Shown here: positions 772-30,200 of the stretch, one piece after another | Layout: each line of letters begins with the position of its first letter | How positions within the stretch are numbered: the first letter of the stretch is position 1 | Source: Macrostomum lignano | Taxonomy: Eukaryota | DNA: 64,000 nucleotides | Reading direction: 5' to 3' | NCBI GenBank assembly: GCA_002269645.1 | Contig: NIVC01000202.1 | Location: 620,001-684,000 of the forward strand | Notes under the pieces: generated by a model | Database searches by the model: none | What the model was told of the DNA's origin: nothing | Seen by the model: only the letters and a program-made list of their open reading frames with translations | Translations under genes and position numbers: made by a program

Positions 772-3700
772 GTTCCGTCCGGCCTGTTCATCCCGTCCCT
801 AGCTGTTGGCGCCATAGCCGGTCGCGTCCTTGGCAACCTGCTAGAACAGGTGGCCGTCTCCAACATGGAGGCCTTCCCGTTCCGCCTGTTCTGCCGAGTC
901 GGCCAGCCGTGCATCAACAGCGGCCTGTACGCCATGATCGGGGCTGCCGCGGCTCTGGGCGGAGTGACCAGAATGACTCTGTCTCTGGTAGCCATCATGC
1001 TTGAACTAACGGGCGGCCTGCAGTACATTGTGCCACTAATGATAGCGGCTGTCACATCCAAATGCGTTGGCGAAGCCATCACTAAGCACGGTATCTATGA
1101 GGAGCACGTCCGGTTGAACGGCTATCCGTTCCTAGATAATAAGGACGAGTTCACGCATACCACTATAGCCGCAGACATTATGCGGCCCAGGCCTGGCGAA
1201 CCGGCGCTTAAATTACTTTATCAAGACTCTATGACTGTGGAAGCTGTGGAACGTCTGCTAACTAACTCCGATGTTAACGGCTTTCCTATTGTTGTTTCCG
1301 AGCATTCGCACTATTTGGTTGGCTTTGTTACTAAGCAGGAATTGGCTTTGGCAATTGGTGAGAAATTCTCTCTTCGTATTGATTATAATAGGCATGAATC
1401 CCATTGATCACAATGGCATATTGTGTCTATGGTTGTGGAGTCAACCAATGGCAGATTGTGTCTATGGTTGTGGAGTCAGCCAATGGCAGATTGTGTCTAT
1501 GGTTGTGGAGTCAGACAATGGCAGATTGTGTCTATGGTTGTGGAGTCAGACAATGGCAGATTGTGTCTATGGCTGGGGAGTCAGCCAATGGCAGATTGTG
1601 TCTATGGTTGTGGAGTCAGACAATGGCAGATTGTGTCTATGGTTGTGTAGTCAAACAATGGCATATTGTGTCTATGGTTGTGGAGTCAAACAATGGCATA
1701 TTGTGTCTATGGTTGGGGAGTCAGACAATTGCAGATTGTGTCTATGGTTGGGGGGTCAGCCAATGGCAGATTGTGTCTATGGTTGTGGAGTCAAACAATG
1801 GCATATTGTGTCTATGGTTGGGGAGTCAGTCAATGGCAGATTGTGTCTATGGTTGTGGAGTCAGACAATTGCAGATTGTGTCTATGGTTGGGGAGTCAGC
1901 CAATGGCAGATTGTGTCTATGGTTGTGGAGTCAGCCAATGGCAGATTGTGTCTATGGTTGTGGAGTCAGACAATTGCAGATTGTGTCTATGGTTGGGGGG
2001 TCAGCCAATGGCAGATTGTGTCTATGGTTGTGGAGTCAGCCAATGGCAGATTGTGTCTATGGTTGTGGAGTCAGCCAATGGCAGATTGTGTCTATGGTTG
2101 GGGAGTCAGCCAATGGCAGATTGTGTCTATGGTTGTGGAGTCAGCCAATGGCAGATTGTGTCTATGGTTGTGGAGTCAGACAATGGCAGATTGTGTCTAT
2201 GGTTGTGGAGTCAGCCAATGGCAGATTGTGTCTATGGTTGTGGAGTCAGACAATTGCAGATTGTGTCTATGGTTGGGGGGTCAGCCAATGGCAGATTGTG
2301 TCTATGGTTGTGGAGTCAGACAATGGCAGATTGTGTCTATGGCTGGGGAGTCAGACAATGGCAGATTGTGTCTATGGTTGTGGAGTCAGCCAATGGCAGA
2401 TTGTGTCTATGGTTGTGGAGTTAGACCCCACACAGTTACCATGTTCATATATTTCTACTGCAAGTAGTCCAATTTGCGCAAATTTATTCAAGAGTACTCG
2501 CGCAAGCACGAGGACGGCATAGTAAGCGAGTCGCTGGTGTACTTCACCGAACGTCTGACCCACGGCGGCGACGCCAGACGGTCGGACCAGCCGCCTGAGC
2601 TCAAGCTGAGACGGGTTGTTGACTTGGTATGTACTGCAATTTGCCGCACAAACATAACGTTAAAGTACAGGAGTTCACAACTAGATTTTTCACAAACTAG
2701 CCGCTTCGAAAACAAGACATTTCACAAACTAGACACTTCACAAACTAGACACTTCACAAACTAGACATTTCACAAACTAGTCACTTCACAAACTAGACAT
2801 TTCACAAACTAGACATTTCACAAACTAAACATTTCACAAACTAGTCACTTCACAGACTAGATATTTCACAAACTAGACATTTCACAAACTAGACATTTCA
2901 CTAACTAGTCACTTCACAAACTAGACATTTCACAAACTAGACATTTCACAAACTAGACATTTCACAAACTAGACATTTCACAAACTAGACATTTCACAAA
3001 CTATACATTTCACAAACTATACATTTCACAAACTAGACATTTCACTAACTAGTCACTTCACAAACTAGACATTTCACAAACTAGCCACTTCACAAACTAG
3101 ACATTTCACAAACTAGACATTTCACAAACAAGTCACTTCACAAACTAGATATTTCACAAACTAGACATTTCACAAACTAGACATTTCACTAACTAGTCAC
3201 TTCACAAACTAGACATTTCACAAACTAGACATTTCACAAACTAGACATTTCACAAACTAGACATTTCACAAACTAGACATTTCATAAACTATACATTTCA
3301 CAAACTAGACATTTCACTAACTAGTCACTTCACAAACTAGACATTTCACAAACTAGCCACTTCACAAACTATACATTTCACAAACTAGACAATTCACAAA
3401 CTAGACACTTAACAAACTAGACAATTCACAAACTAGACACTTAACAAACTAGTCACTTCACAAACTAGCCACTTCACAAACTATACATTTCACAAACTAG
3501 ACAATTCACAAACTAGACACTTAACAAACTAGACACTTCACAAACTAGTCACTTCACAAACTAGTCACTTCACAAACTAGACAATTTACAAACTAGACAA
3601 TTCACAAACTAGTCACTTCACAAACTAGACACTTAACAAACTAGTCACTTCACAAACTAGCCACTTCACAAACTATACATTTCACAAACTAGACAATTCA

Positions 3701-5224
3701 CAAACTAGACACTTAACAAACTAGACACTTCACAAACTAGTCACTTCACAAACTAGTCACTTCACAAACTAGACAATTCACAAACTAGTCACTTCACAAA
3801 CTAGACACTTAACAAACTAGACACTTCACAAACTAGTCACTTCACAAACTAGACAATTCACAAACTAGTCACTTCACAAACTAGACACTTCACAAACTAG
3901 ACATTTCACAAACTAGTCACTTCACAAACTAGACATTTCACAAACTAGACATTTCACAAACTAGACACTTCACAAACTAGACATTTCACAAACTAGACAT
4001 TTCACAAACTAGACATTTCACAAACTAGACATTTCACAGACTAGACATTTCACAAACTATACATTTCACAAACTAGACATTTCACTAACTAGTCACTTCA
4101 CAAACTAGACTTCACAAACTAGCCACTTCACAAACTAGACATTTCACAAACTAGACATTTCACAAACAAGTCACTTCACAAACTAGATATTTCACAAACT
4201 AGACATTTCACAAACTAGACATTTCACAAACTAGACATTTCACTAACTAGTCACTTCACAAACTAGACATTTCACAAACTAGACATTTCACAAACTAGAC
4301 ATTTCACAAACTAGACATTTCACAAACTAGACATTTCACAAACTATACATTTCACAAACTAGACATTTCACTAACTAGTCACTTCACAAACTAGACATTT
4401 CACAAACTAGCCACTTCACAAACTAGACATTTCACAAACTAGACAATTCACAAACTAGACACTTAACAAACTAGTCACTTCACAAACTAGACAATTCACA
4501 AACTAGACACTTCACAAACTAGTCACTTCACAAACTAGTCACTTCACAAACTAGACAATTTACAAACTAGACAATTCACAAACTAGTCACTTCACAAACT
4601 AGACACTTAACAAACTAGTCACTTCACAAACTAGCCACTTCACAAACTATACATTTCACAAACTAGACAATTCACAAACTAGACACTTAACAAACTAGAC
4701 ACTTCACAAACTAGTCACTTCACAAACTAGTCACTTCACAAACTAGACAATTTACAAACTAGACAATTCACAAACTAGACACTTCACAAACTAGTCACTT
4801 CACAAACTAGACATTTCACAAACTAGACACTTCACAAACTAGTCACTTCACAAACTAGACAATTCACAAACTAGACAATTCACAAAATAGACATTTCACA
4901 AACTAGTCACTTCACAAACGAGATATTTCACAAACTAGCCTCTTCACAAACTAGCCTCTTCACAAACTAGCCACTTCACAAACTTGAGTGTTAACTGACT
5001 TAATAAAAGTGAATAATTTCAATGCAAACCGCTTCCAGTCGCCAATCACAGTGACAGACCAGACTCCAATGGAAGTTGTCCTGGAGATGTTTCGAAAGCT
5101 GGGCCTCAGACAGACTCTGGTGACGCACAATGGCCGTCTATTGGGTATTATCACGCGAAAAGATGTGCTGCGGCATATTGAATATCTGCACAATATTGAT
5201 CCGCACAATTTACTCTTTAACTGA
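772..5224 (+). CDS. CLCN3: ClC-3/4/5-type chloride/proton exchanger, 3' part (last TM helices + two CBS domains); gene starts before the window
   Basis: Exons 772-1357, 2493-2626, 5039-5224 join in frame at AG/GT sites (906 nt). Motifs [49 protein letters not shown] and [39 protein letters not shown] are typical of the ClC-3/4/5 subfamily. Orthology within the subfamily is not resolvable. Confidence 0.93.
1408..2422. repeat. Intronic minisatellite, 35 bp (CAATGGCAGATTGTGTCTATGGTTGTGGAGTCAGC)
   Basis: Tandem units, e.g. at 1446 and 1481. Confidence 0.97.
2685..4985. repeat. Intronic minisatellite, 16 bp (ACATTTCACAAACTAG) with higher-order duplications
   Basis: Tandem units; the rare variant AAACAAGTCAC recurs at ~3126 and ~4165. 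Confidence 0.97.
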
Positions 5225-6378
5225 TCTATATTGTCGCGCTTTTCTTCTTATTGAGTAAGCGCTCCTGCTTTCAATTGAAAATTTGCTTCTTCTTATGTAA
5301 TGTTTTGTGTTAGAGTTTTATTTTTTCTTGTTGTACTATTATACTACTGAATTGCTGTAACAAATGGCTTATATGGTAGTAGTATATAAGGAATATATTT
5401 AACCGTATAAATTTATTGTTGTTTTTTCTTGCGAACCGTATTATTCCAAGGAGTCGTTAACGCTATTTTGTCTTCTTGTATTGTGTCATTCGATGTTTGC
5501 TATTGTGGTGCAGTGCGCACGTTTCTTGGAAATGCATTACCGACATATGGCCGATTGATTTCTTATAAAATTAACATGAGTTTTTGTTCAATATAAGCTA
5601 GCTATAAGCATTGACAGGCCTTCAAAAAAATTCCAAGAAACAAACGACTTGTATACGCGTAATTTTCTAAAATAATTTTATCCGTTTGTTTTTGTTTTTG
5701 GAAGTGGCCAAACTACTTAATACAAAACATTCTGTAGTAATTGTAGTAGCTATATTGTATTAGTAATATTACTACTGCGCGCTAGGGACCAAAGATAAAG
5801 ATATAGGCATAAAGATAGAGAATTAATACGGTTGTAAACTATTTGCTGTGTAATGGCGTTTAACTTTGCGTTTTTGTCTGTGTTTTCTGCAAATACATGT
5901 TTTTGAGAGTTGGCCTACTTACATAAGTAGTATGTTGAAACAGTAAAATTAAGATATTTAGCATTTTACAAGTCAAATCTAAGAAAGTCTGTTCTTGATT
6001 AATTTCTAAGAAAACGTGGTTTAATTCTCAATGTACTTAACTAGTGTGGAGCTTACTGATATGATAGATTATGCATTCTGATGATTCCATATTATATATT
6101 AATTTGTTTATGCGCTATCAGTGTGAAGTATTGATTTTTGTTTGCGAGATTTTTTCGACTGGGAAAATAGACAGATTTCAATACTCAAGTGTCCATTTTA
6201 ACAATAACAATGTTGCTGTTCTGAACTTTTAGCTTTCGCTTTTTAATTCTCTGCATTTGCTTCCTTTGTTATACTGGTGGGTTACGAGTTAAGCAGAGTT
6301 GGCCGCGGTTAGTATGAAGATACTAAATAGACTCTAGCTTTAGTTTAACGCCATGCTGTGATTGTACAGAATGTACAG

Positions 6379-6384
6379 AATAAA
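6379..6384 (+). promoter_or_regulatory. Likely polyadenylation signal of the ClC gene
   Basis: The only AATAAA I found between the ClC stop (5224) and the CABIN1 acceptor (6650). Confidence 0.5.
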
Positions 6385-6618
6385 AGTACAAGCTGCACCC
6401 GGTTTAAGAGGGGAGTGATTTTTTCGGCCATAAGACCTAAATGTCACAAAGCATAAAACTTCTTAAGACCTAAATTTCATAAGATCTTAATTTCATCAGA
6501 CCTAAATTTCATAGCGCCTAAACTTCTCAAGACCTAATAGACCTAAATCTTTTCGGCGATGCAAACTTTCGGGCTTGTGATGACTGCGCCCTGTTTAAGA
6601 GAGCCTAGTAGCGGTAGT

Positions 6619-6650
6619 AACTAAGGAACCTCCCTGTTGCACGCCTTCAG
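6619..6650 (+). promoter_or_regulatory. 3' splice acceptor (candidate trans-splice site) directly before CABIN1 codon 2
   Basis: Branch-like aactaa (6619-6624), pyrimidine-rich tccctgttgcacgccttCAG, then CTC CGA ATA GCC GCT TTG AAC GCG = LRIAALNA. In-frame TAA at 6618-6620 and no ATG before it. Confidence 0.75.
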
Positions 6651-9600
6651 CTCCGAATAGCCGCTTTGAACGCGGCGCCGCCGCAGGCGCCCACAAGCTC
6701 GGCGTCATCGGCATCTGGAGCTGTGCAGGCCAAGCAGCACCATCAGCATAGCAACAAGCAGCAGCACAGGCACCAGTCAAACCATGCCTCATCGTCGGCT
6801 AATTCCTCCGCTATGGATGAATCTGCTGTCGCGTCGGGCACTCGCGAAACCGAGGAGGCGCTTGTGACGCGCAGTTTTCAGCGCGCGCTTGCGCGTCTAG
6901 CGCAAATTGGCGCCGGCTCCGGCAGCGACAGCGGCGGCCCCGCAGTTGAAGAGGCCATGCGCTCTCTCGAGGCCATCACTGCTAGCCGGATCTTCCTTGA
7001 CGGTCCCGCGGCTGCTCACCTATCCGAGCACCTGCGCCAGATCCTCGCCAGCTGCCACCGTCAGCTCGGTCAGCATCACTGCTGGGCTAGGCGGTTCGAC
7101 CTCGCCGTGCGCCATCTTTCAGCCGCTGTCGAGGCCGATCCGCGCGACATCGCGGCCGCCTTTCACCTGGCCTGGTCGGCCTACCTCAGCTGCGACCTGC
7201 GCTTGGCCGCCTCCGCATTGCGCGCCTGTTTGAAATTAAATCCCGACCATCTGCCGGCTCTGGATCTCAGCCTGTCTGTTGCTTATTGTATGGGCGAGCC
7301 AGAGACTTGGCTAGCCGCCTGCGGTCGGCTGCTGGACCGCCTTCCGAGCCACCGTCGGGCGGCCTTCTGCGTTGCCGAGTATCTGCGCTGCGCACCGTCA
7401 GCTTCAAACTGCCTGCCAGCGGGCTCCGCCCTGGCCAAGCTGGCTGCAGCGATTCAGTTGAAAACTGTAGATGAGAGCGAGTGGGAGGCTGATAGGAAAG
7501 AGTTGATGGCTGTGCGAGCGGAGCATCAGGTGAATGTTTCATCTGTTTATTGGTTCGTCTGTAAGCGTCCAGCTACAGACTCATTAGGCTCCAGCTAGAG
7601 ACTCATTAAGCTAATGCTACAGACTCATTAAGCTAATGCTACAGACTCATTAAGCTAATGCTACAGACTCATTAAGCTAATGCTACAGACTCATTAAGCT
7701 AATGCTACAGACTCATTAAGCTAATGCTACAGACTCATTAAGCTAATGCTACAGACTCATTAAGCTAATGCTACAGACTCATTAAGCTAATGCTACAGAC
7801 TCATTAAGCTAATGCTACAGACTCATTAAGCTAATGCTACAGACTCATTAAGCTAATGCTACAGACTCATTAAGCTAATGCTACAGACTCATTAAGCTAA
7901 TGCTACAGACTCATTAAGCTAATGCTACAGACTCATTAAGCTAATGCTACAGACTCATTAAGCTAATGCTACAGACTCATTAAGCTAATGCTACACTCCC
8001 AAAACCGATACTGCAGGCGCGAACAAATCCACAGTCTGCCGAAGCAGCCGCCGCGAAGCCGTCAGTGCCGGAACTCGTGCCAGTTAGCCCGACGGAAGCC
8101 TCCAATTGGACTGCAATGGCGGCTCTGCTCGAGCAACTGTGCGTGACTTCAACAGTTGACGATGCAGACAGCTGGGGCAGCTGCCGAGCCTACAGGCTGA
8201 TCCGCCTGGTGCCCGCAGCGCTGGTTTCGGAGTCCGATGATCAGCTGCCTGCTGTCCAGGATGATGAAGCTTCTGAGCCTTCTCCGCCGCCTCCGCTGGC
8301 TACTCCCGCATCGTCCGCTGAGCTGACCTCGATAGCAAAGTCTTCAACGGCCAGTCTGGGCCAGGCCTTCCCGGCTGAGCTGCTGTGCAGTCGCCGGTCC
8401 AACCGCTTGGCTGCCGCCTCCGCCAATTCCGCTTCCGCTTCCGCTAGCGGCGGCGGCGACTCGACCGCTGAGGACTCCGACGACGATGACGACGAACTGG
8501 CAGCTGCCGCTGGCTCGTCTGACGCCGCCTCGGCTGCCGCGGCGGTTGCCGATCGACTTCAGCGACTGCTGGACGCCTCCGGCCGCTGCTGCTTGCCCAG
8601 CTGCGTTCGCCGACTGTCGGGCGTTTACTTTGCTAGACGCTACTGCGCCGGCCGCAGCGGCGGCAGCTCCGACGATGACAACGACAATGACGGCGATTGT
8701 GAAGCTGATGCCGCCGCTTCCGCTGCATTGGCGGCTGTCCAGCTGTTGAGCCCGTTCCGGCTGGACGAGCTCCTTTCTCGACTGTCCGAGTCTGCCGAGC
8801 TGTACACCCCCGCCGACGCCGCCGCCGTGTTCTGCGGCCTCCTCGCCGAACAGTTCGAACTCCGCTGGCCCGCTGAATTGCTTGCAGCTTTCCTCCGCCT
8901 AAGCGGGCCGCGCCTCGGCATTCTGGCCGACAATCCGAACGTGTCCGTCAGCGGGTTGCACTGCCTGCCAGCCGAGTCGCTCTGTCTGGTGGCCCTGGCT
9001 CACCTGGAGCTCCGATTGGACCGTCGCCGCGTCAAGGATGCCGCCAATTGGGTGAGCACTGATCTCAGCTGGCCAAATTTGGAGTCTCTGGCGCACTCGA
9101 TCGCCTGCCTGCTGTTGCGCCTGGCGTCGCCGCCGGCTCGTCTGCTGCTGCGCCTGGCCTGGGCCCGGCTGCGGCTCTCCGCCGCGTGTCGGCGCGGACT
9201 GGACGATCAGGCGGCGTTCGGCTACCTGGCGGCCGGCCTGGACTCGCCGCTGGTCTCGCCCAACTCGCCCGACTGGCCAGTTGTCAACTTGGCGGCTCTC
9301 CGTCGGCTGCGTCGGGCAGCCAAATCTGGTCGCGAGTTCGCGCTGGCCTCCGCTGCCGCTCGGTCGGGCAACTCGGCCGCCGTGGTGGCCGCTCTTCGAC
9401 CGGCTTTGTACGCTCGCGAGCGCTGCAGCGATGCGGCTTCAACTGCTGAAATCAGTGCTGAACGGGCCAGGTGTGACATCTTAGTTAATTAGCTATCTTA
9501 TCCTGTCCCTGTAACACCTGAACAGTCTTGCCCGTAATAAAACCCTTTGAAAAATCCCTAAATATTAAGCTGTAACACCCCCAAAATCACTCCTGTATGC

Positions 9601-12600
9601 CCCCTCCCCCAAAATCATCCTTGTAACACCCAAAATCATCTCTGTAACCCTCAAAATCATCTCTGTAACCCTCAAAATCATCTCTGTAACCCTTAAAATC
9701 ATCTCTATAACACCCCCAAAATACTCTCTGTAACACCCGCAAAATCATCTCTGTAACCCCAAAATCATCCCTGTAACACCCCCAAAACTATCCCTGTAAC
9801 ACCTCTCAGAACTATCCCTGTAACACCTCTCAAAGCCATCCCTGTAACACCCCTCAAAACCATCCCTGTAACACCCCTCAAAGCCATCCCTGTAACACCC
9901 TCAAAGCCATCCCTGTAACACCCCTCAAAGCCATCCCTGTAACACCCCTCAAAAGCATCCCTGTAACACCCCTCAAAAGCATCCCTGTAACACCCCTCAA
10001 AGGTATCCCTGTAACACCCGATCCTTGGCAGGCAAATCTGCGAGATGTTCGTGAGCTCCTGTTACCGCCTCGGCGACCTCGCCCAGTGCTATTCGCACGG
10101 CGCCCGCCTGCTCCGGCTGCTGGCCGCAACCGACGAATCCCGCCCAGTTCGAGCATCAACCGTGGCATTCGCGTTTCGCAATCTGCTGGCCTGCCAGGAG
10201 CATCTGGGCGCCCGGCCAGCCGACTTGGCCGAGACTTGCGCTCAGCTGGCTGCGTGCGCCGATCTCATTGTCCGGTGCCTGCGCCATCGAGTGCCGCTCA
10301 CAGATGCGGAAGCTTGGATTTACCTGCACCGGCACTTTGTGTTTTTGATTGAGGAAACTGAGAAGCAGATAAATGATAAGTCCATGGATACTGTACATGT
10401 ATCTGCCCATTGCGTTATTGAAGCTGTGGCCGAGGCTGTGGAAGTTGATTCTGATGCAGCTGCTGAGAAGCCCGTGTTGGAAGCTGGAACTGGTCAAGCA
10501 GCGGATGCTGGAACTGGTCAAGCATCGGAAGCTGGAACTGGTCAAGCATCGGAAGCTGGAACTGGTCAAGCATCGGAAGCTGGAACTGGTCAAGCATCGG
10601 AAGCTGGAACTGGTCAAGCATCGGAAGCTGGAACTGGTCAAGCAGCGGAAGCTGGAACTGGTCAAGCAGCGGAAGTTGGAACTGTCAACGCATCGGAAGC
10701 TGGAACTGTCAACGCATCGGAAGCTGGAACTGTCAACGCATCAGACGCTGGATCCGATCAAATGCAGGTCCCAGGCGAAGTTGATGAAGCTAGAATACGC
10801 GCGGAGCTGCGGCAGCGTCAGTCCAATCTGCTGGAATCTGCGGGCCGCCTGCTGATTCTGGCCCACCAGCTGATGCACGAGACGTCGGCGGCAGCGGCGG
10901 CGGCGGCGCCAAGTCAGCAGCCCGCCTGCAATGCCGGCTGTCAGCGAAGCGATGGCCGGCTACTGCACTACACCGTGGCTAGTCTGGTGCCGCTGCTGCT
11001 GCGCCAACAGCCGCCACCGGACCACCCGGCCTACCTGGCCGTTGACCAGGCCTTCCACTGCCTCTACGGCCTGGGCAGGCGGGGCCGCTACTCCCGCCGC
11101 GGCCGGATCCGGGATCATCGATGCGGCGGACCGCCGGTTAGCATCGACTGGGAGACCGGGCGACACCTGATGCGCTACTATCTGCCGGACAAATTCCCCG
11201 AGTTCGATTCCACCAGGCTGGCCTCGCTGCCGGCCGATCTGGAGCGCTGCTTCGACTTGGCCGCCGCTGGCCTGCCCGACCGGCTGCGTGTTGACGCCAA
11301 CGCTGTTAACGACTTCCTATTCGGCGGAGTGGACACTTTGCCTGAGTCTAATCGGCCGTTGACGCCGGATGAACGGTTGACTGCCGATATTCACTACCTG
11401 CTGGCCGACTGCTGCCTGAAATCCAACCGCTTCCTGCCGGCTATCAAGCACTATTTGAGGGATCTGGCGCTGAGTCCCGACCGCTTCGACTCTTGGGCTG
11501 GTGAGTTGGCGGCGATTGCTCATAAACCAACCTGGGAATTGCTCATACATGTAAGTCAATCCAAGAATCGCTCGTAAACCAACCCAGGAATCGCTCATAC
11601 ATGTAAGTCAATCTAAGAATCGCTCATAAACCAACCCAGGAATCGCTCATACATGTAAGTCAATCTAAGAATCGCTCATAAACCAACCCAGGAATCGCTC
11701 ATAAGTCAATCTAAGAATCGCTCATAAGTCAACCCAGGAATCGCTAATTTAACCAAACCCAAGAATCGCTCATAAGCCAATCCAGGAATAGCTCATAAAC
11801 CAAACCCAAGAATCGCTCATAAACCAAACCCAGGAATCGCTCATAAACCAAACCCAAGAATCGCTCATAAGTCAATCTAAGAATCGCTCATAAGTCAACC
11901 CAGGAATCGCTCATAAACCAAACCCAAGAATCGCTCATAAACCAAACCCAGGAATCGCTCATAAACCAAACCCAGGAATCGCTCATTAGTCAATCTAAGA
12001 ATCGCTCATAAACCAAACCCAAGAATCGCTCATAAACCAAACCCAGGAATCGCTCATTTAACCAAACCCAAGAATCGCTCATAAGCCAATCAAGGAATCG
12101 CTCATAAACCAAACCTAGGAATCGCTCATAAACCAAACCCAGGAATCGCTCATAAAACAATTAAGAATCGCTCTTAAACCAAACCCAGGAATCGCTCATA
12201 AACCAAACTCAGGAATCGCTCATAAAAAATTAAGAATCGCTCATAAACCAAACCCAAGAATCGCTCATAAACCAAACCCAGGAATCGCTCATAAACCAAA
12301 CCCAGGAATCGCTCATAAACCAAACCCAAGAATCGCTCATAAACCAAACCCAAGAATCGTTCATAAACCAAACCCAGGAATCGCTCATAAACCAAACCCA
12401 GGAATCGCTCATAAACCAAACCCAGGAATCGCTCATAAACCAAACCCAGGAATCGCTCATAAAAAAGTAAGAATCGCTCATAAACCAAACCCAAGAATCG
12501 CTCATAAACCAAACCCAAGAATCGTTCATAAACCAAACCCAGGAATCGCTCATAAACCAAACCCAGGAATCGCTCATAAACCAAACCCAGGAATCGCTCA

Positions 12601-14146
12601 TAAACCAAACCCAGGAATCGCTCATAAAAAAGTAAGAATCGCTCATAAACCAAACCCAAGAATCGCTCATAAGCCAACACGAGAAAGGCTAATAAACCTG
12701 AACATCATTCGAACAGCCAGCCCGTTAATCCTGAAAATAAACAACCGGGATAATACACTGCCCGTATAACAAATCAAAGCACACCTCCCACCGCAGGCAT
12801 GGCCCTGGCCCGGTGCAGCCGACTCCAACAGAAGCTGAACCTACAGGACGGCAGCAACAGCAGCACTGTTAGCCGCAAATATTCCCTAGCCTGTCTGCGC
12901 TCGTTCGATCAGGCTCTGCGCATTAATCCGCTGTGCCCGAAGCTGCTGACTGAGCGCGGACTATTCGCCTACGAGCTGCACTCGCACGCCAGCCAGCTGG
13001 GCCGGCGGGGCAAGCAGTTGGAGCTGGCCGCTGAGTGGCGTCTGCCTATGCTGCGGCTGGCTAGGGAGTCTTTTCTACAGGTAGGTTGCAGGTGACGCGC
13101 TTGAGATGGGAATCGGTTGTGAAGCCGATTGCAGAGTAAACCAATAGAGCCGATTGCAGGTTTTTCAGTTTTCATTTGAATTGCCATTGGAACAGGGGTC
13201 TGCAAAGTCCGGCCCGATCATGGTTAGTCTTTCGCATCTCTCTTCTCCCCTCTCCTCTCCTCTCCCCTCTCCTCTCTCCTCTCCTCTCTCCTCCCTCTCG
13301 TCTCCTCTCTTCTTTCCTCTCCTCTCCCCTCTCCCCTCTCTCCTCTCCTCTCTTCTTTCCTCTCCTCTCCCCCTCTCCTCTTCCTCCTCTCTCTCCTCTC
13401 CTCTTTTATTTCCTCTCCTCTCCCCTCTGCTCTCTTCTTCCCCTCCCCTCTCAGCTCCCGTCTCCTCTTCTCTCTTCTCCTCTCCTCTCCCTCTCTCCTC
13501 TTCTCTCTTCTCCTCTCCTCTCCCTCTCTCCTCTTCTCTCTTCTTTCCTCTCCTCTCCTCACCTCTCCTCTCCTTGAGGTAAAAAAGGCCCTGCATTAGA
13601 ATATAGTTTTCATTTTTAGTATATCTGACTGATGGTAAAAATATTATTTGGTGTATATTGAGTAATATGATTATTCTAATCACAGTTCCATTTGTCAAAA
13701 CTACTGTTAGTAGTTCAAGATCAAAATTTAAAATCTCAAATTTCTTAGGCGGCCTCTGCGGCCAACCATCCGGAGCTGCGCGATGCCGGGGAAGAATGCG
13801 AGAACTGGCTGTACAACTACATGCTGGGCAAGTGCTGCGAGAAGTCGGCCGATCATCCCGATATCTGCCTTGGTTACTACGCCGCCGCGGCTAACGAGCT
13901 GCGACAGAGCGGCGCCCGCTATCCCAAACGAATCAGCACCTCCTACGGTAGCACTCCCCGGCTGGCTGTGGAAGCCCTGGAGATGCAGTACAGACAGCTG
14001 GCCATTGTCTGCAAGCAGCTGCTCATGTTTCTGCCTAGGCCGAAATCTGCTGTCAGTTCACCGACTACAGCGTCTGTCAATCTTAGCTGGATTGAAGCGC
14101 GATTGATTGAATTGTCCAAGTCTGCCTTTCAACGTCGGGACGCTCT

Positions 14147-14179
<33 letters not shown>

Positions 14180-16020
14180 AGGATCGAAGCGTCGACATGC
14201 CGGCGGCGGCGGCAGCGGCAGAACCAGGCGAGTTGATTGTGTTGAAGATCACGAGGGTGGTGGCAGAGTAGCTCCGGCCAACCTCCCCAAGGCAGAGAGA
14301 GTGTACAGCCCCGACGACAGGTATTCATATATATGCAACCGACAGCTCAGCCGCAGCTATTGCGCGGCGCATCTGAAGGCTGCGTACGGCTGTTCAGTCC
14401 AAGGACTGGGGGGTCGCCACACACAGCCTCAATCACCCCAGCTAATGCTGGCACCCATTTTACAGCTGGGTGAACTGAAGCAATGCAGAGCTAAGTGTCT
14501 TGCTCATAAGGACACAGATTGTTCCGAATTGGATCAGGAATCGAACCCCCGACCTATCAGTCGTGAGTCCGACGCTCTGACCACTAGGCTACAACCCCCT
14601 ATGTATATATATATATTTGATTATATTTATGATTCCCGCAGAGCCAGCAAGCGGGCCAGGATCGAAGACAGCGGCTGCAGCGCGGCCGAGGACTCCAGTG
14701 CCCACCATGGCGGCGTCTCGGCCAAATCGCAGCTAGCGGAGGTCGACAGTCGAGCCGAGGTTCGCCAACTGCTCAACGACCAGCTAGACGTGGTGTCCGC
14801 TGTGCACTCGCTCGTGTCCGGCGCCGCTGGAATCTGCGGCGAATCCGCGCCTCGTCCGGACGAGCTTCTGGCCAGGAGATTGGCTCGCTGCGTTGCTATG
14901 GCAACCGAACAGTTGGCCGACCTGCTGGCGAGACTGCCGCATCACTACAAAGCTGCCTGCCTGCTGGCCCGGCTTCGGCTTCGAGTTGGGAAGCGGCGGG
15001 AGGCCCGCGACCTCCTGCTGGGGCCCGGCGACCCAGGAGTAGGCTGGCAGCGGCTGGCTCATATGCCCTGTCCGGGACTGTTCCAGGTGTGCGGGCTTGG
15101 TGTGCAGTTAGTGTGCTCAGGATTAGAGGTTTGAGTTTGGGGATTTTGAGTTCGAGTTGGATTTTGAGTTCGAGTTGGGGATTTTGAATTTGAGTTTGGG
15201 GATTTGAATTCGAGTTGGGGATTTTGAGTTCGAGTTGCGGATTTTGAGTTCGAGTTGGGGTTTTGAGTTCGAGTTGCGGATTTTGAGATCGAGTTGGGGA
15301 TTTTGAGTTCGAGTTTGGGGATTTTGAGTTCGAGTTTCGGGATTTTGAGTTCGAGTTGGGGATTTTTATTTCAAAATGGGGATTTTGAGTTTGAGTCCGG
15401 TCGGTTTCGAATTTTGAGTTACGATTATGAGATTTGCGATTTAAACTGGGATTTTGAGCTCGAATTACGACTGCAAATTTGAGATTGGGTTCTTAGAAGG
15501 ACTCGGAATCAAAGTATTATTCCTCAGTTTAATTCCCCAACCCCCCTCCCCCCAGGACCGCCGCCCGGCCAATCTGTTCAACGGCGTCTGGCGTCTGCCA
15601 AGCGACGACATCGACAGGTCCGGCTGCTTCGCCGCCCACATGCGCCGCGCCCTCGAGCTGGCCATCGAGGCGGCCGATTGGCACCGCCTGCTGCCGCTGC
15701 ATACCTGCCTGCGCAGCACCGAGAACCGCGGCTGCCTTGTTGACGACGACCTGCGCTGGCTGACCGACCGCAGCTTGGCGGCCATGGCCGACCTGCTGGC
15801 AGATGAGCGCTCGCCTCCGACTGTCAGCCGGGCCCAGCTGCTTCAGCTGATGAAGTGTCGGAAGCTGGCCTCGGCCGCTGCTGCTGGCGGCGGCGGCGTT
15901 GTCTACGATCGACTGCTGGCGGCCGCCTTCGCCAGGTGCGGCGCTGCCGTGGTCCGTCCGGACAGGCCGCTTCTGGACCAGGCGCTGGAGTTCTGCGAGA
16001 GCGGCGGCGGTAGCCTTTGA
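6651..16020 (+). CDS. CABIN1: CABIN1 / Hir3-like HIRA histone-chaperone complex scaffold (TPR protein), about 1856 aa including a Met not encoded at this position
   Basis: Exons 6651-7529, 8017-9470, 10032-11500, 12797-13080, 13749-14320, 14642-15086, 15556-16020 join in frame (5568 nt). Matches remembered CABIN1 blocks: (M)[112 protein letters not shown]. Confidence 0.92.
7575..7995. repeat. Intronic minisatellite, 22 bp (GCTAATGCTACAGACTCATTAA), near perfect
   Basis: Fills CABIN1 intron 1. Confidence 0.97.
9560..10018. repeat. Intronic minisatellite, ~24 bp (CATCCCTGTAACACCCCTCAAAGC)
   Basis: Fills CABIN1 intron 2, with a divergence gradient. Confidence 0.93.
10480..10750 (+). repeat. Coding minisatellite, 24 bp (EAGTGQAS octapeptide) in CABIN1 exon 3
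   Basis: GAAGCTGGAACTGGTCAAGCATCG about 11 times within the open frame. Confidence 0.85.
11515..12675. repeat. Intronic minisatellite, 24 bp (GAATCGCTCATAAACCAAACCCAG)
   Basis: Fills CABIN1 intron 3. Confidence 0.97.
13238..13575. repeat. Polypyrimidine (CTCTC-type) simple repeat
   Basis: CABIN1 intron 4. Confidence 0.95.
14334..14599 (-). mobile_element. tRNA-derived SINE, copy 1 (CABIN1 intron 5)
   Basis: Reverse complement has A box TAGCCTAGTGG, B box GGTTCGATTCC, a central GTGTCCTT..AGCAAGACACTT..CACCCAGCTGTAAAATGGG block and the 3' tail shared by four other copies. Confidence 0.85.
15135..15465. repeat. Intronic minisatellite, ~20-21 bp (GAGTTCGAGTTGGGGATTTT)
   Basis: CABIN1 intron 6. 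Confidence 0.9.
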
Positions 16021-17179: not shown

Positions 17180-18229
17180 ATACTATACACGTCTTGCTAA
17201 CTGTCCAGGCCACGAGTGCGCTGCGGATGAAGAGAAAGAAGAGGAACTTTCACTTCTCGCTCTATGCAATCCGTGCCTCCTAGATTCTCTCAACCGTTTG
17301 CCTCGTGTAAGCACCTCATCAGCAGCGCTCAGTCCAGGCCCTTACTCTGACCCCAACCCTCCCAATAATTCTATCCTCAGGCAACCAGCATTTGCTGGGC
17401 CATCCCTATCCACTTTTCTGCCTGCCTTGCACCGCAGCTGTGTGCGCGTGTGTGTGGCTACAAATGAGGGGCTGGGAGAGTTCGACAAAACGGAGGGCTT
17501 GAGGCCGGCAAGAGTCGGGATGCAGGATGAGGAGGAATCTGGGAACAGTAAGTACATCTCCATCGTCGACTGGTTGCTCTCCCATCTCCCCGCTCCCCCC
17601 CCCCCAGATCTTCCTTCTTAGTCTTAACCGAGGCTTAAGCAGAGAGAGAGAGAGAGATTGAGTGAGGTGGACGGAGCAGGGGCTTGGAGCAGTTAAGGGA
17701 AGGATGAGAGGGGAGAAGTCCGGAGCGAGTACGGGAAGTGGAAAGAGAGCAGCAGCCTCTGTTCCCTTCTCTTCTCCGGGCCGGTTTTCTCCATTTTTCT
17801 CTTTCTCCAATTCCACACGTGTCTCGCACCAGCCCCCCCTGTCTCTCCCTTCATCCTTCTCGCCCGGCCTGCTAAACTTTTTTTGTTGAAAAAAAATCGG
17901 ATTGGTTGAGGTTGGAGGCGGGCGGTGGGATAGGGAAGGCTGAGAGCTGGGGAAGGTCCGCTTTACGATTGGGGATCTTTTATGAGCCAGCAAGCCGGGT
18001 ACAGCAACGGCCTAGCCGGTTGTGCGCCCTCTGTGTGTATCGGCAATTGCCCGGTCTGGACTGGAGCTGGAATTCGCGCTGATCTGCGGCTGAGCGAGGG
18101 CGGCGCCCCGCGGTGGCTGCTGGCCGCACTGAGATTGAAACTCTGCAGATCTTGCCCTCACAAGCACACCTGCCACCTGGCTGCTACTGCTGCTGCTGCT
18201 GCTAATTCACTTGCTGCGCCCCAGCAACC

Positions 18230-24200: not shown

Positions 24201-26072
24201 GAGGATGTCAGATCCCCTACGAGAGGATGTCAGATCCCCTATGAGGATTTCAGATCCCCTACGAGAGGATGTCAGATCCCCTACGAGAGGATGTCAGATC
24301 CCCTACGAGAGGATGTCAGATCCCCTACGAGAGGATGTCAGATTCCCTACGAGAGGATGTCAGATTCCCTACGAGAAGATGTCAGATCCCCTACGAGAGG
24401 ATGTCAGATCCCCTACGAGAGGATGTCAGATCCCTACGAGAGGATGTCAGATCCCCTACGAGAGGATGTCAGATCCCCTACGAGAGGATGTCAGATCCCC
24501 TACGAGAGGATGTCAGATCCCCTACGAGAGGATGTCAGATCCCCTACGAGAGGATGTCAGATTCCCTACGAGAGGATGTCAGATTCCCTACGAGAGGATG
24601 TCAGATTCCCTACGAGAGGATGTCAGATCCCCTACGAGAGGATGTCAGATCCCCTACGAGAGGATGTCAGATTCCCTACGAGAGGATGTCAGATTCCCTA
24701 CGAGAGGATGTCAGATTCCCTAAAAGAGATTGTCAGGGTCTCCGACGAGAGTGTCAGGACTTCCACTATGTTGTCAGATCTCTGAATTAGGAATTTTCAA
24801 CTTCAAAATAGTGAATGTTGTCAGGTTAATCAATTTTGAATAAATTTCAAATTTCAAGTAACTCAAACGAAATGCAGTGCGGTGTTGCTCAGAAAAATGA
24901 TTGACAGAGTACAGAGACAGACAGTGGTTAATGAGGGCAGACTTTGTGGATCGGATGGCACCGCTTGCGTGACTGCATCCGGGAACGAAAAAGCTTTCTA
25001 TTTTTGTATTTTAACCATCTTTTTACTTTGCCTCGGTCGAAATAAACCGCAAATCTCTCCAACTCCCCGCCCACGCGCAGGCCAGTACTACTGCCTCAAC
25101 ATGGGCATCATCACCCTATCCACCTTCCTGTCTGTCATTGTGGTGAATTTTCACTTCCGCGGCGACAACAGGCAGGAGGTGCCGCGCTGGCTCAAAAAGG
25201 TGAGCCGCTGTGTTGCGAACGCAGTATTGCCAAATACAGCGGGAATTCCTTACACCATGGTTAGCTAGTTTGAAGGGGCCGTAACCCAGTGGTCTGGCGC
25301 CGCTCTTATGTTGCAGAGGATATTCCAAGTGCAGTCACTTTAATTTGGGGCAAAATTGGAATCTCGGCTTGGCTCTGCTCGTGCAATTAACGGCCTAGAG
25401 GGCCAACCCCCAAGGCACAGTGAAGTGTACATGCCTGTGTTGTTCGAAGCTTTTGTGTTCAGTCGAACCGCCCCTGCACCGCACGCTCGCCCGCAGCTGG
25501 CCATCGAGCACGGAGCTCGCATGCTCTTTGTGACCTTGGCGGCCAAGCCCCAGCCGCAGCAGCAACAGCAACAGCAGCAACAGAAGCAGCAAAAGCAACA
25601 GACAGAGTTTCAATTACGGCAGATGCAGCAGACTCAGCAGCAGCAGCAGCTGCTCTCTTCGGCACCTCCCTACAGCTACGGCCGGGTCAACGGCGCCTCG
25701 GTGCAGCCGAACATGTCGCAGCAGCTGCTGCTGTCGCAGTCAAATCCTTTAGGCTACTTGAACTGTCAGCAGCAGCCGCTGATGGCGCCAGCCCTGCTAG
25801 CGATGGAGCCGATAGCCAGACGAAAGCTGAACACCCTGGCCAAGGACCTGCGAGACATTGTCAAAGCTCTGCGCTACATTCAACGACTGCACGAAGGCAA
25901 AGAACGGGTCGGTCGCACCGTGCAAGAGTGGCGCTCGGTTGCCATGGTGCTCGACAGGCTGTTCTTTGTCATCTACTTCGTCACCATAGTGATGTCGATC
26001 GTGGTCTACTACCCCAAAGAGGGCAACGAGATTGTGCCGGGTGTCATTCCCAACGACACGAACGTGTCGTAA
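18230..26072 (+). CDS. Cys-loop ligand-gated ion channel, nicotinic acetylcholine receptor alpha-type subunit of the anion-selective (ACh-gated chloride channel) clade, about 583 aa
   Basis: Exons 18230-18266, 20677-21044, 22240-22349, 22661-22834, 23199-23479, 23991-24077, 25081-25199, 25497-26072 join in frame (1752 nt). Signal peptide [17 protein letters not shown]; [12 protein letters not shown]; Cys-loop [15 protein letters not shown]; WTYDG; loop C YPCCPEPY; M1-M2 [20 protein letters not shown]; M4 [16 protein letters not shown]. The first exon is less certain than the rest. Confidence 0.92.
18285..18945. repeat. Intronic minisatellite, 26 bp (GACTGACGGAGGTTGAACCATTGAGT)
   Basis: Receptor intron 1. 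Confidence 0.95.
19706..20560. repeat. Intronic minisatellite, 33 bp (CTGATGTCTCACTGTCTACTTGTGCCATTCTAT)
   Basis: Receptor intron 1. Confidence 0.97.
21060..21965. repeat. Intronic minisatellite, ~29-31 bp (GTTATATCTGTTATATCCCTGATTCTGGTGT family)
   Basis: Receptor intron 2. Confidence 0.92.
22905..23110. repeat. Degenerate tandem repeat (TTAGCAACC..TTTCAGAGC.TTCCAAGAAACCCT..TAGCGCCC)
   Basis: About four imperfect units in receptor intron 4. Confidence 0.75.
23617..23735. repeat. 16-bp tandem repeat (TTGTGAAGCTTCGAGC)
   Basis: Receptor intron 5. Confidence 0.9.
24135..24730. repeat. Intronic minisatellite, 22 bp (GAGAGGATGTCAGATCCCCTAC)
   Basis: Receptor intron 6. Confidence 0.97.
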
Positions 26073-30122: not shown

Positions 30123-30200
30123 CCCACCCCCCGCCCAATTAGCAACATTACGCAAGCTAGTCACGCACACAATCACCGGTCCCTGACCAGTTGCCAGGCG

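What the first reader, a model, noticed from the sequence alone, without database searches (positions are those of the whole stretch)
6379..6680. CABIN1 has no start codon of its own: the Met may come from the trans-spliced leader in a ClC->CABIN1 operon
Seen: the conserved CABIN1 N-terminus (vertebrate MIRIAALNA, from memory) is present as LRIAALNA from 6651. The Met codon position is occupied by an acceptor CAG with a pyrimidine tract and a branch-like motif, and there is an in-frame TAA at 6618. The next in-frame ATG is 54 codons later (6813). The only ATG|GT I found since the ClC stop is a weak ATG|GTAGTA at 5373, inside the presumed ClC 3'UTR. The ClC AATAAA (6379) lies only ~270 nt upstream. 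Established: flatworm spliced-leader exons end in AUG, and that AUG can serve as the initiator Met. Inference: a dicistronic pre-mRNA is resolved by SL trans-splicing, with SL-AUG completing MLRIAALNA in frame.
Basis: partly seen in the sequence, partly recalled or inferred. Interest (0 to 1): 0.85.

Follow-up and report, generated by a model that had tools for sequence, protein, structure and literature searches.

The report
Flatworm CABIN1 start codon supplied by splicing
In the flatworm Macrostomum lignano, the CABIN1 gene's first genomic coding exon starts at codon 2, right after an ancient splice acceptor, so the start codon must be spliced on; the donor is most likely the AUG that ends the spliced leader, a mechanism already known in flatworms.

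Summary
The window is Macrostomum lignano (GCA_002269645.1, NIVC01000202.1:620001-684000). LRIAALNA starts at 6651, directly after CTTCAG. Four in-frame stops lie at 6606-6620. No in-frame ATG occurs before 6813. GenBank lists this CABIN1 orthologue, and its duplicate copy, as 5'-partial proteins without a Met.

New here: the acceptor is ancestral. Lingula, Owenia, Branchiostoma and Haliotis CABIN1 all read ATG|GT..., with an intron directly after the start codon and an acceptor directly before codon 2. Three trematodes keep the same acceptor. The Opisthorchis felineus model, whose annotation took trans-splicing into account, also starts at codon 2 right after the acceptor and is also marked 'partial'.

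The Met must therefore come from a spliced-on exon. The M. lignano spliced leader ends in ...GCATG and would give MLRIAALNA; Lingula has MLRIAALNE. SL trans-splicing is the best explanation (about 0.7), but I could not reach any SL-junction read. The ClC-CABIN1 operon is plausible (about 0.5): there is a good poly(A) site about 250 nt upstream, about 160 nt after removing a repeat.

The only cis candidate is ATG|GTAGTA at 5373. It is a chance-level, weak donor and lies before any ClC poly(A) signal.

SL-AUG initiation and M. lignano operons are both published, so this is a new member of a known kind and of modest interest.

The parts
4988..5224 (+). Last coding exon of the upstream ClC chloride channel/transporter gene (second CBS domain; ends ...DPHNLLFN, stop TGA 5222-5224)
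   Evidence: ORF. Pfam CBS 9.2e-11, and Voltage_CLC on the earlier exon 850-1404. The GenBank gene (820 aa; Voltage_CLC + CBS) ends at L001:8559 = window 5224.
5225..6400 (+). Presumed ClC 3'UTR (inferred). AT-rich with no long ORF. No canonical AATAAA or ATTAAA before 6379; variant hexamers such as AATATA start at 5392.
   Evidence: The extent is inferred from the single canonical poly(A) site; there is no 3'-end read data.
5373..5381 (+). ATG|GTAGTA. The only ATG followed directly by GT upstream, and so the rival cis 'exon 1' donor candidate. The implied intron would be 1275 nt.
   Evidence: The count is at chance level. It has T at +5, whereas 5 of 6 real donors of this gene have G. It lies 149 nt after the ClC stop, before any poly(A)-like hexamer.
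6363..6384 (+). Two UGUA motifs (TGTACAGAA x2) followed by the AATAAA hexamer at 6379-6384: a putative poly(A) signal for the ClC mRNA
   Evidence: read from the sequence.
6410..6428 (+). GU/U-rich stretch (GGGGAGTGATTTTTTCGG), 26-44 nt after the hexamer: a plausible downstream cleavage element
   Evidence: read from the sequence; inference.
6429..6537 (+). 16/32-nt tandem repeat (AAGACCTAAATTTCAT...) in the gap between the poly(A) signal and the acceptor. Copy number differs between the two genome copies.
   Evidence: Expanded by about 163 nt in the duplicate locus L002.
6606..6620 (+). Four in-frame stop codons (TAG 6606, TAG 6609, TAG 6615, TAA 6618) that close the reading frame upstream of the exon
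6619..6650 (+). 3' splice site: loose branch-like ACTAAG, pyrimidine-rich tract, and CTTCAG acceptor (AG at 6649-6650). It is homologous to the acceptor of the ancient intron that follows the CABIN1 start codon.
   Evidence: Motif [T/C]TNCAG from PMC8629364. Homologous acceptors directly before codon 2 in Lingula, Owenia, Branchiostoma and Haliotis, and in Opisthorchis, Schistosoma and Calicophoron. Identical in the duplicate copy L002.
6651..7529 (+). First genomic coding exon of the CABIN1 orthologue (Mlig012606.g1). It begins at codon 2 (LRIAALNA...), contains TPR repeats, and ends CAG|GTGAAT.
   Evidence: Pfam TPR_2. The splice to 8017 is confirmed by the GenBank protein P0151. The GenBank CDS starts at 6666, 5'-partial.
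6813..6815 (+). First in-frame genomic ATG (codon 55 of the exon): the fallback initiation site of the rival reading
8017..16020 (+). Remaining CABIN1 coding exons: 8017-9470, 10032-11500, 12797-13080, 13749-14227 (followed by a GC-AG intron), 14642-15086 and 15556-16017, then stop TGA at 16018-16020
   Evidence: exact threading of GenBank protein P0151 onto the window.

Best explanation
The gene at 6651-16020 is the Macrostomum lignano orthologue of CABIN1 (calcineurin-binding protein cabin-1). In animals generally, CABIN1 has a phase-0 intron directly after its start codon: exon 1 is 5'UTR plus ATG, and exon 2 begins at codon 2. M. lignano keeps the acceptor of that intron (CTTCAG|CTC at 6645-6651). 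No usable ATG-ending cis exon is evident upstream.

The most likely mechanism is this. The 35-nt spliced leader (...TTATTGCATG) is trans-spliced onto this acceptor. Its terminal AUG then takes the place of the ancestral exon-1 AUG, and translation starts MLRIAALNA...

The substrate pre-mRNA is probably read-through from the ClC gene just upstream on the same strand. That RNA would be cleaved and polyadenylated about 10-20 nt after AATAAA at 6379, and trans-spliced about 250 nt further on. This would make ClC and CABIN1 a two-gene operon.

What is shown: gene identity, the exon boundary, the absence of a colinear start codon, the antiquity of the acceptor, and the frame compatibility of the SL AUG.

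What is inferred: that the SL, rather than a cis exon, is joined here, and that the two genes share one transcript.
For: 1. Species and gene. The window equals NIVC01000202.1 of M. lignano. The best non-Macrostomum hits are named calcineurin-binding protein cabin-1, with E-values down to 1e-56.

2. The N-terminus must be translated. LRIAALN matches residues 2-8 of orthologues across phyla. Lingula reads MLRIAALNE, and 36 of 72 long representatives start M-x-[RK]-[ILF]-x-ALN. The frame is closed by four stops just upstream, and no ATG lies between them and 6651.

3. The acceptor is ancient. Lingula, Owenia, Branchiostoma and Haliotis read ATG|GTAATG, GTAAGT, GTAGGT and GTTAGC, with the acceptor directly before codon 2.

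4. Another flatworm has the same layout. O. felineus CABIN1 (TGZ59461/2, 'partial') starts FSFQPLN exactly after ...ctttttag|, whose TAG is an in-frame stop. That annotation used SL-trimmed reads (PMC6530080).

5. Both M. lignano copies are annotated 5'-partial. They start 15 and 21 nt inside this exon and have no upstream exon, even though the transcriptome assembly was genome-guided (method in PMC5730564).

6. The M. lignano SL ends in ATG. 30-39% of its genes are trans-spliced, mostly conserved ones, and the trans-acceptor motif [T/C]TNCAG matches CTTCAG.

7. The flatworm SL AUG is an established initiator. It is in frame in 28% of S. mansoni trans-spliced mRNAs and is required by more than 40 cDNAs (Cheng 2006, via PMC9851317).

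8. No donor matching the published GT[G/A]AG motif lies between the ClC poly(A) region and the acceptor. The only ATG|GT is weak.

9. Operon. The genes are on the same strand. The AATAAA is preceded by two UGUA motifs and followed by a GU/U-rich stretch, 272 nt before the acceptor. After removing the tandem repeat, that distance is about 163 nt here and about 166 nt in the duplicate copy. This is near the roughly 100-bp mode of M. lignano operon spacers and well under the 1-kb criterion.
Against: - I could not obtain any read or cDNA with the SL joined to CTCCGAATAGCC. The protein collection holds no RNA-seq-derived M. lignano CABIN1 fragment.
- No paper or held supplement lists this gene.
- The GenBank models start at 6666 and at the equivalent of 6672, not exactly at 6651. 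If the annotation pipeline had used a trans-splice peak, the boundary would be at 6651, so it may not have recorded one here.
- In other phyla the ATG sits on a cis exon 0.8-3.7 kb upstream. The 5373 candidate would give a 1275-nt intron, inside that range.
- Parasitic flatworms often use the same acceptor for both cis- and trans-splicing (PMC12582326). The Schistosoma and Calicophoron models carry predicted cis first exons.
- The AATAAA count is at chance level, so the end of the ClC 3'UTR, and with it the operon, is not established.
Confidence: 0.7

Rival explanations
1. A cis-spliced 5' exon supplies the ATG, as in other animals. M. lignano would retain a short exon 1 ending in ATG, either at 5373-5375 (ATG|GTAGTA) or elsewhere upstream, spliced in cis to 6651. 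The annotation would simply have missed it.
For: - An intron directly after the ATG is the ancestral CABIN1 structure, with a cis exon 781-3742 nt upstream in four phyla.
- The 5373 candidate gives a 1275-nt intron, within that range.
- 5' ends of weakly expressed genes are often missed by transcript assembly.
- Acceptors shared between cis- and trans-splicing are common in parasitic flatworms (PMC12582326).
Against: - One ATGGT in 1426 nt is what chance predicts (expected 1.28).
- The donor GTAGTA lacks the published GT[G/A]AG motif. It has T at +5, where 5 of 6 donors of this gene have G, and TG instead of the usual AG before the junction.
- It lies only 149 nt after the ClC stop codon and upstream of every poly(A)-like hexamer, so it would sit inside the ClC 3'UTR with no room for a promoter.
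- An in-frame ATG at 5364 would add MAY before the Met.
- Neither GenBank copy has such an exon.
- O. felineus, annotated with trans-splicing in mind, also has none.
Confidence: 0.15
2. Translation starts at the first genomic in-frame AUG (6813). The LRIAALNA stretch would be 5'UTR, whether or not the mRNA is trans-spliced.
For: ATG 6813 is the first in-frame genomic ATG. The 54 codons before it are mostly low-complexity.
Against: - Seven of seven residues (LRIAALN) match the orthologue N-terminus, exactly at the exon boundary homologous to codon 2. Such conservation is not expected of untranslated sequence across phyla.
- If the SL is added, its AUG is the first one a scanning ribosome meets, and it is in frame with no intervening stop.
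- An out-of-frame ATG at 6784 precedes 6813.
Confidence: 0.07
3. SL trans-splicing supplies the AUG, but the gene is monocistronic. CABIN1 would have its own promoter in the 1.4-kb spacer and discard an outron, and ClC would end earlier at a variant poly(A) signal near 5392-5600.
For: - Roughly 60% of trans-spliced M. lignano genes are not in operons (PMC8629364).
- Variant hexamers AATATA and TATAAA occur at 5392, 5406, 5564 and 5590.
- The AATAAA at 6379 is at chance level by count.
- The distance from ClC stop to acceptor is 1426 nt, above the 1-kb operon criterion if the 3'UTR is short.
Against: - The site at 6379 has the full architecture of a real poly(A) site (two UGUA, AATAAA, a GU/U-rich element) and no other + strand gene to serve.
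- The repeat-adjusted spacer of about 165 nt is the same in both genome copies despite repeat expansion.
This is a variant of the best explanation, not an alternative source for the Met. Its probability is part of the 0.7 given above.
Confidence: 0.3
4. Non-AUG initiation on an unspliced transcript, or a decaying or misassembled gene copy.
For: No ATG is present. M. lignano DV1 carries duplicated chromosomes, so redundant copies could decay (PMC8629364).
Against: - Between TAA 6618 and 6651 the in-frame codons are CTA AGG AAC CTC CCT GTT GCA CGC CTT CAG. None is CTG, GTG, ACG or TTG.
- Both copies keep an intact ORF of about 1800 codons with canonical splice sites.
- The acceptor and exon start are identical in both copies.
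- The same layout occurs in O. felineus.
Confidence: 0.03

Closest known systems
[quoted passage not shown]
   Same: - The organism's SL ends in AUG.
- The recipient exon starts at codon 2 of a conserved protein.
- The SL AUG is in frame.
- No other upstream in-frame AUG exists.
- The genomic frame is closed by stops upstream of the acceptor.
   Different: It is not demonstrated here by a cDNA or read. The species is the free-living M. lignano, for which I found no published statement on SL-AUG use; the papers I read describe the SL and the operons but not this. Here the acceptor can be traced to an ancestral start-codon intron.
SL-resolved operons of M. lignano (transcriptional units in Wudarski et al. 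2017, PMC5730564; operon criteria in Ustyantsev & Berezikov 2021, PMC8629364)
   Same: Same-strand neighbours. The putative poly(A) site of gene 1 lies about 250 nt (about 165 nt after repeat adjustment) before the acceptor of gene 2. A simple repeat inflates the spacer, as those authors describe.
   Different: Neither the ClC poly(A) site nor the trans-splice site has been read from data here. Measured from the ClC stop codon, the gap is 1426 nt.
Start-codon introns (a phase-0 intron immediately after ATG) in CABIN1 of other bilaterians
   Same: The acceptor is directly before codon 2 (Lingula, Owenia, Branchiostoma, Haliotis). The downstream peptide x-R-I-A-A-L-N is the same.
   Different: In those species exon 1 (5'UTR + ATG|GT) is present in cis 0.8-3.7 kb upstream. 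In M. lignano no convincing cis exon exists, and the upstream gene ends 1.4 kb away.
Opisthorchis felineus CABIN1 model CRM22_009060 (TGZ59461.1 / TGZ59462.1, 'partial')
   Same: The annotated CDS begins at codon 2 (FSFQPLN) exactly at an acceptor. There is no Met, and an in-frame stop lies immediately upstream.
   Different: It is a trematode with a different SL sequence. The N-terminal peptide is more diverged. The upstream neighbour was not examined.

Membership tests
CABIN1 (calcineurin-binding protein cabin-1) orthologue | Significant similarity along the protein to CABIN1 of other animals, with CABIN1 as the best non-self hits | tested here: met
   Exhaustive HMMER search: 186 representatives at E<=1e-10. 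The top non-Macrostomum hits (E from 1e-56) are named calcineurin-binding protein cabin-1 in spider, annelid, amphioxus, brachiopod, tick and others.
CABIN1 (calcineurin-binding protein cabin-1) orthologue | Conserved extreme N-terminus M-x-[RK]-[ILF]-x-A-L-N | tested here: met
   LRIAALN at 6651-6671 aligns to residues 2-8. Only the Met is absent from the genomic exon.
CABIN1 (calcineurin-binding protein cabin-1) orthologue | TPR-repeat architecture | tested here: met
   Pfam TPR_2 above its cut-off in exon 1 (28.9 bits against 27) and in the whole protein (28.3 bits).
CABIN1 (calcineurin-binding protein cabin-1) orthologue | C-terminal MEF2-binding / calcineurin-binding region of vertebrate CABIN1 (Pfam MEF2_binding) | tested here: not met
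   No MEF2_binding hit in the 1795-aa M. lignano protein, whereas the amphioxus orthologue has one. This region is not universal in invertebrate orthologues, so it does not overturn orthology. It does caution against transferring the 'calcineurin-binding' function.
mRNA that uses the SL 3'-terminal AUG as initiator (flatworm slORF) | The species has an SL RNA whose exon ends in AUG | tested here: met
   M. lignano SL = CGGTCTCTTACTGCGAAGACTCAATTTATTGCATG (PMC8629364). The species identity of the window is shown. No SL RNA gene lies in the window itself.
mRNA that uses the SL 3'-terminal AUG as initiator (flatworm slORF) | SL sequence found joined to the acceptor in RNA (reads, cDNA or 5' RACE) | not testable with these tools
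   No RNA-seq access. No RNA-seq-derived protein fragment of this gene is in the collection. Papers and supplements do not list the gene.
mRNA that uses the SL 3'-terminal AUG as initiator (flatworm slORF) | The SL AUG is in frame with the ORF, and no in-frame genomic AUG is available upstream of the conserved N-terminus | tested here: met
   The exon starts at a codon boundary (6651). Stops lie at 6606-6620. The first in-frame ATG is at 6813.
mRNA that uses the SL 3'-terminal AUG as initiator (flatworm slORF) | Acceptor not paired with an upstream cis donor (outron logic; Conrad et al. 1993, as cited in PMC8629364) | tested here: inconclusive
   No GT[G/A]AG donor lies between 5256 and 6650. 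The only ATG|GT (5373) is weak. Weak donors cannot be excluded from sequence alone.
M. lignano SL-resolved operon (Ustyantsev & Berezikov criteria) | Adjacent genes on the same strand with no opposite-strand gene between them | tested here: met
   ClC ends at 5224 (+) and CABIN1 starts at 6651 (+). There is only a scatter of short ORFs on either strand between them, none with any sign of being a gene.
M. lignano SL-resolved operon (Ustyantsev & Berezikov criteria) | Repeat-adjusted distance from the 3' end of gene 1 to the trans-splice site of gene 2 below 1 kb | tested here: inconclusive
   About 163 nt if ClC ends at the 6379 poly(A) site, and about 166 nt in the duplicate copy. It would be about 1.1 kb if ClC ends near 5400. 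The ClC 3' end was not measured.
M. lignano SL-resolved operon (Ustyantsev & Berezikov criteria) | Downstream gene trans-spliced, and a read-through precursor RNA exists | not testable with these tools
   This needs the SL and T-fill tracks or RT-PCR.
Conserved start-codon intron of CABIN1 | Phase-0 intron between codon 1 and codon 2 at the homologous position | tested here: met
   ATG|GT in Lingula, Owenia, Branchiostoma and Haliotis, with acceptors directly before codon 2; absent in Phlebotomus. The same acceptor is present in O. felineus, S. mekongi and C. daubneyi and at window 6650.

The most novel reading that the evidence does not exclude
CABIN1 may be a traceable case of a spliced leader replacing an ancestral first exon. 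The bilaterian gene had a mini-exon '5'UTR + AUG' followed by a start-codon intron. In the flatworm lineage the cis exon was lost, and the SL, whose invariant 3' AUG makes it a functional equivalent, took over the old acceptor. This may have happened once before macrostomids and trematodes split, since O. felineus shows the same Met-less, acceptor-flush start. Generalised, genes with start-codon introns would be pre-adapted targets that now depend on the SL AUG. Such dependence would help explain why every flatworm SL keeps that AUG.
Probability: 0.35. Interest if true: 0.55.

Novelty: new member of a known kind. Interest (0 to 1): 0.3.

Why it matters
If confirmed, this gene cannot make its conserved N-terminus without trans-splicing. 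The GenBank 'partial' proteins PAA88095.1 and PAA85158.1 would then be complete once the SL Met is added, which is a concrete annotation fix. The same fix probably applies to many M. lignano and trematode models that are flagged 'partial' or that have been given invented first exons.

The link to an ancient start-codon intron also gives a simple, testable route by which genes become dependent on the SL AUG. M. lignano is transgenic-tractable, so that route could be tested with reporters. Beyond this, the mechanism itself is textbook for flatworms.

Tried and rejected
- The search for homologous proteins, run twice (exon 1, then the conserved DSWAG region), returned nothing. It missed even M. 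lignano proteins that are demonstrably in the collection (against 32, 34).
- The SL sequence is not in the window. Rfam found no RNA family and ARAGORN found no tRNA.
- Searches for CABIN1, Mlig012606 or Mlig027893 found nothing. This covered the full text of the library and the held supplements of the three M. lignano papers I checked. A search for CRM22_009060 in the O. felineus supplement also found nothing.
- Comparison with the duplicate locus L002 is uninformative about constraint. The two copies are about 98% identical everywhere, including the spacer.
- PDB sequence search gave only designed TPR proteins.
- I enumerated all upstream 'ATG...in-phase GT' mini-exons. Apart from 5373, the only one with a half-decent donor is ATG 6081...AGT|GTGAAG at 6123. 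It would prepend 14 unconserved residues, so I rejected it.
- An alternative in-frame acceptor at AATAG|6660 would give MAALNA. I rejected it as the main site because LRI is conserved.
- P0004, a protein model from an earlier M. lignano gene set held in UniProt, starts RIAALNA. It is riddled with frameshifts and says nothing about the 5' end.


Full report
**What is in the sequence.**
- CTC CGA ATA GCC GCT TTG AAC GCG (LRIAALNA) begins at 6651, immediately after ...CACGCCTTCAG.
- The frame upstream is closed by TAG, TAG, TAG and TAA at 6606, 6609, 6615 and 6618.
- No ATG lies between those stops and 6651. The next in-frame ATG is at 6813.
- Upstream on the same strand, a ClC channel gene ends at TGA 5222-5224. 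Pfam gives Voltage_CLC and CBS, and the C-terminus reads ...DPHNLLFN.
- Between 5225 and 6650 there is one AATAAA (6379) and one ATG|GT (5373).
- Both single occurrences are what a composition-matched random sequence gives (expected 1.39 and 1.28). Their presence alone carries no weight.

**Where the window comes from and what the gene is.** An exhaustive HMMER search used exon 1 plus the conserved downstream exons as the query.
- It returned near-identical proteins that the sources name as Macrostomum lignano: PAA88095.1 (BOX15_Mlig012606g1, 'partial') and PAA85158.1 (BOX15_Mlig027893g1, 'partial').
- It then returned about 150 orthologue representatives named calcineurin-binding protein cabin-1 in arthropods, annelids, brachiopods, molluscs, amphioxus and vertebrates.
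- The locus fetched for PAA88095.1 is identical to the window, with an offset of 3335. The window is therefore GCA_002269645.1 NIVC01000202.1:620001-684000.
- Threading the GenBank protein onto the window gives these exons: 6651(6666)-7529, 8017-9470, 10032-11500, 12797-13080, 13749-14227, 14642-15086 and 15556-16017, with stop TGA at 16018-16020.
- Pfam sees only TPR repeats. The vertebrate-type MEF2-binding tail is absent.

**The annotation already lacks a start codon.**
- PAA88095.1 begins LNAAPPQ, at window 6666. The duplicate copy on NIVC01000343.1 begins GAPPQ, at the equivalent of 6672.
- Neither position follows an AG, and the two differ, so they look like coverage-limited 5' ends rather than biological ones.
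- Both models stop 15-21 nt inside this exon. Neither has an upstream exon or a Met.
- The M. lignano transcript models were built by mapping reads end-to-end (PMC5730564). In my reading, SL-bearing reads cannot map across the junction under that setting. Models that fade out just inside a trans-spliced exon are therefore expected.

**The N-terminus is conserved up to the exon boundary.**
- Of 72 long orthologue representatives that start with Met, 36 begin M-x-[RK]-[ILF]-x-A-L-N at residues 1-8. Examples are MIRIAALN, MFRIAALN and MLRISALN. Lingula begins MLRIAALNE.
- The M. lignano exon thus starts precisely at residue 2.
- Sequence this well conserved must be translated, so an in-frame initiator has to be spliced on upstream.

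**The key new result: the acceptor is ancestral.** I fetched genomic loci for five non-flatworm orthologues.
- Four have the start codon alone at the end of an upstream exon, with the acceptor directly before codon 2:

| Species | Donor after ATG | Intron length (nt) |
|---|---|---|
| Lingula | ATG\|GTAATG | 781 |
| Owenia | ATG\|GTAAGT | 3742 |
| Branchiostoma | ATG\|GTAGGT | 804 |
| Haliotis | ATG\|GTTAGC | 983 |

- Only the sand fly Phlebotomus has lost this intron.
- So 'an acceptor where the Met codon should be' is the normal CABIN1 gene structure.
- The real question for M. lignano is narrower: is the ATG-bearing exon still encoded in cis, or has the SL taken its place?

**Other flatworms.**
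- Opisthorchis felineus CABIN1 (TGZ59461.1/TGZ59462.1, also 'partial') starts FSFQPLN exactly after ...ctttttag|. The TAG of that acceptor is itself an in-frame stop.
- That genome was annotated with explicit use of SL-trimmed reads (PMC6530080).
- Schistosoma mekongi and Calicophoron daubneyi keep the same acceptor before FSF[KQ]ALN. Their models carry first exons 3.4 and 6.3 kb upstream that add 5 and 17 unconserved residues.
- Those first exons may be real alternative exons or inventions of gene predictors.
- No flatworm examined has an annotated exon ending exactly in ATG.

**Why the SL is the best candidate donor of the Met.**
- The M. lignano SL is CGGTCTCTTACTGCGAAGACTCAATTTATTGCATG.
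- 30-39% of its genes are trans-spliced, preferentially conserved ones.
- The enriched trans-acceptor motif [T/C]TNCAG matches CTTCAG at 6645-6650 (PMC8629364 and PMC5730564).
- All reported flatworm SLs end in AUG. That AUG has been shown to serve as initiator in S. mansoni, where it is in frame in 28% of trans-spliced mRNAs and required by more than 40 cDNAs (Cheng et al. 2006, as summarised in PMC9851317 and PMC12582326).
- SL-AUG joined to 6651 gives MLRIAALNA.

**The cis alternative is weak.**
- ATG|GTAGTA at 5373 is a chance-level occurrence.
- It lacks the GT[G/A]AG motif and has T at +5, where five of this gene's six donors have G.
- It lies 149 nt after the ClC stop and upstream of every poly(A)-like hexamer, so it would sit inside the ClC 3'UTR.
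- It cannot be excluded from sequence alone, and flatworm acceptors are often shared between cis- and trans-splicing.

**The operon.**
- The AATAAA at 6379 has the look of a real poly(A) site. Two UGUA motifs lie immediately upstream (a TGTACAGAA duplication), CA dinucleotides lie 10-17 nt downstream, and a GU/U-rich stretch lies at 6410-6428.
- The spacer to the acceptor is 272 nt, of which 109 nt is a 16/32-nt tandem repeat.
- In the duplicate locus the repeat is expanded. After subtracting the repeat, the spacer is about 165 nt in both copies.
- This fits the published picture of M. lignano operon spacers: a mode near 100 bp after repeat adjustment, and a 1-kb threshold.
- The ClC 3' end was not measured. 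If ClC ends near 5400, CABIN1 would instead be a monocistronic, outron-bearing trans-spliced gene.
- I put the operon at about 0.5 and SL donation of the AUG at about 0.7.

**What could not be done.**
- I could not reach any read-level data.
- The protein collection contains no RNA-seq-derived M. lignano fragment of this gene.
- No paper or held supplement names it.
- The decisive test is to count SL-junction reads against cis-junction reads at NIVC01000202.1:626651, or to look at the SL and T-fill tracks of the species' genome browser.

**Assessment.** It is, however, an instance of two published phenomena, flatworm SL-AUG initiation and M. lignano operons, at a gene that GenBank already lists as 5'-partial. 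The added value here is twofold:
- The acceptor is the ancient start-codon-intron acceptor of CABIN1.
- A trematode shows the same Met-less start.

Together these suggest that the SL replaced an ancestral 'UTR + AUG' exon, possibly once, early in flatworm evolution.

Noticed in passing
window 14228-14641 (CABIN1 intron); also about 26150-26310; L002:8680-9070: A tRNA-like SINE. The intron contains ...GGAATCGAACCCCCGACC...GACCACTAGGCTACAACCCCC, which is the reverse complement of a tRNA-like head. The same element recurs near 26200 (shared ORF text NRQLSRSYCAAHLKAAYG). A related insertion of about 390 bp, flanked by the duplicated target AGAGTTGGCCTACTT, is present in the ClC 3' region of the duplicate locus but absent at window 5905. 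ARAGORN and Rfam do not call it.
   Followed up: partly
window 14227/14228: A GC-AG intron in CABIN1 (CAG|GCGAGT ... cccgcag|AGCCAG). It is required to reproduce the GenBank protein junction GRTR|ASKRAR.
   Followed up: yes
window 10500-10700 (CABIN1 exon 3): The GenBank protein has fewer EAGTGQAS/EAGTVNAS repeat units than the colinear translation of the window. The annotated model therefore skips part of an in-frame coding minisatellite, either a mapping artefact or a non-canonical junction. Repeat number also differs between the two genome copies.
   Followed up: partly
window 1400-2470, 7600-8000, 9550-10000, 11580-12750, 13150-13600, 18160-18950, 19600-20650, 24100-24790, 28700-30180, 30970-31370: Nearly every intron and spacer carries long tandem minisatellites. 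These create spurious ORFs of 100-490 codons on both strands. This fits the repeat-rich M. lignano genome but is a hazard for ORF-based reading.
   Followed up: no
window about 20800-26070 (+): The next gene downstream of CABIN1 is a Cys-loop (nicotinic-type) ligand-gated channel subunit. Pfam Neur_chan_LBD hits fall on exons near 20950, 22230 and 23230. It has its own genomic ATG ([11 protein letters not shown]...).
   Followed up: partly
window 30201-31880 (-): An SH2 + SH3 adaptor-like gene on the minus strand (Pfam SH2 1.3e-17, SH3_2 2e-9).
   Followed up: partly
L009:2001-2015 and L010:2001-2051 (S. mekongi, C. daubneyi CABIN1 models): The annotated first exons add MTWQL and MKVGDSELYDTYTILDT in front of the conserved FSF[KQ]ALN exon. 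These extensions are not conserved with each other or with any orthologue. They may be gene-predictor inventions at a gene that really uses the SL AUG.
   Followed up: no
tool behaviour (against 32, 34): the search for homologous proteins returned no hit for two queries that are 97-100% identical to M. lignano proteins present in the same collection. A negative result from that tool should not be read as absence for this species.
   Followed up: partly
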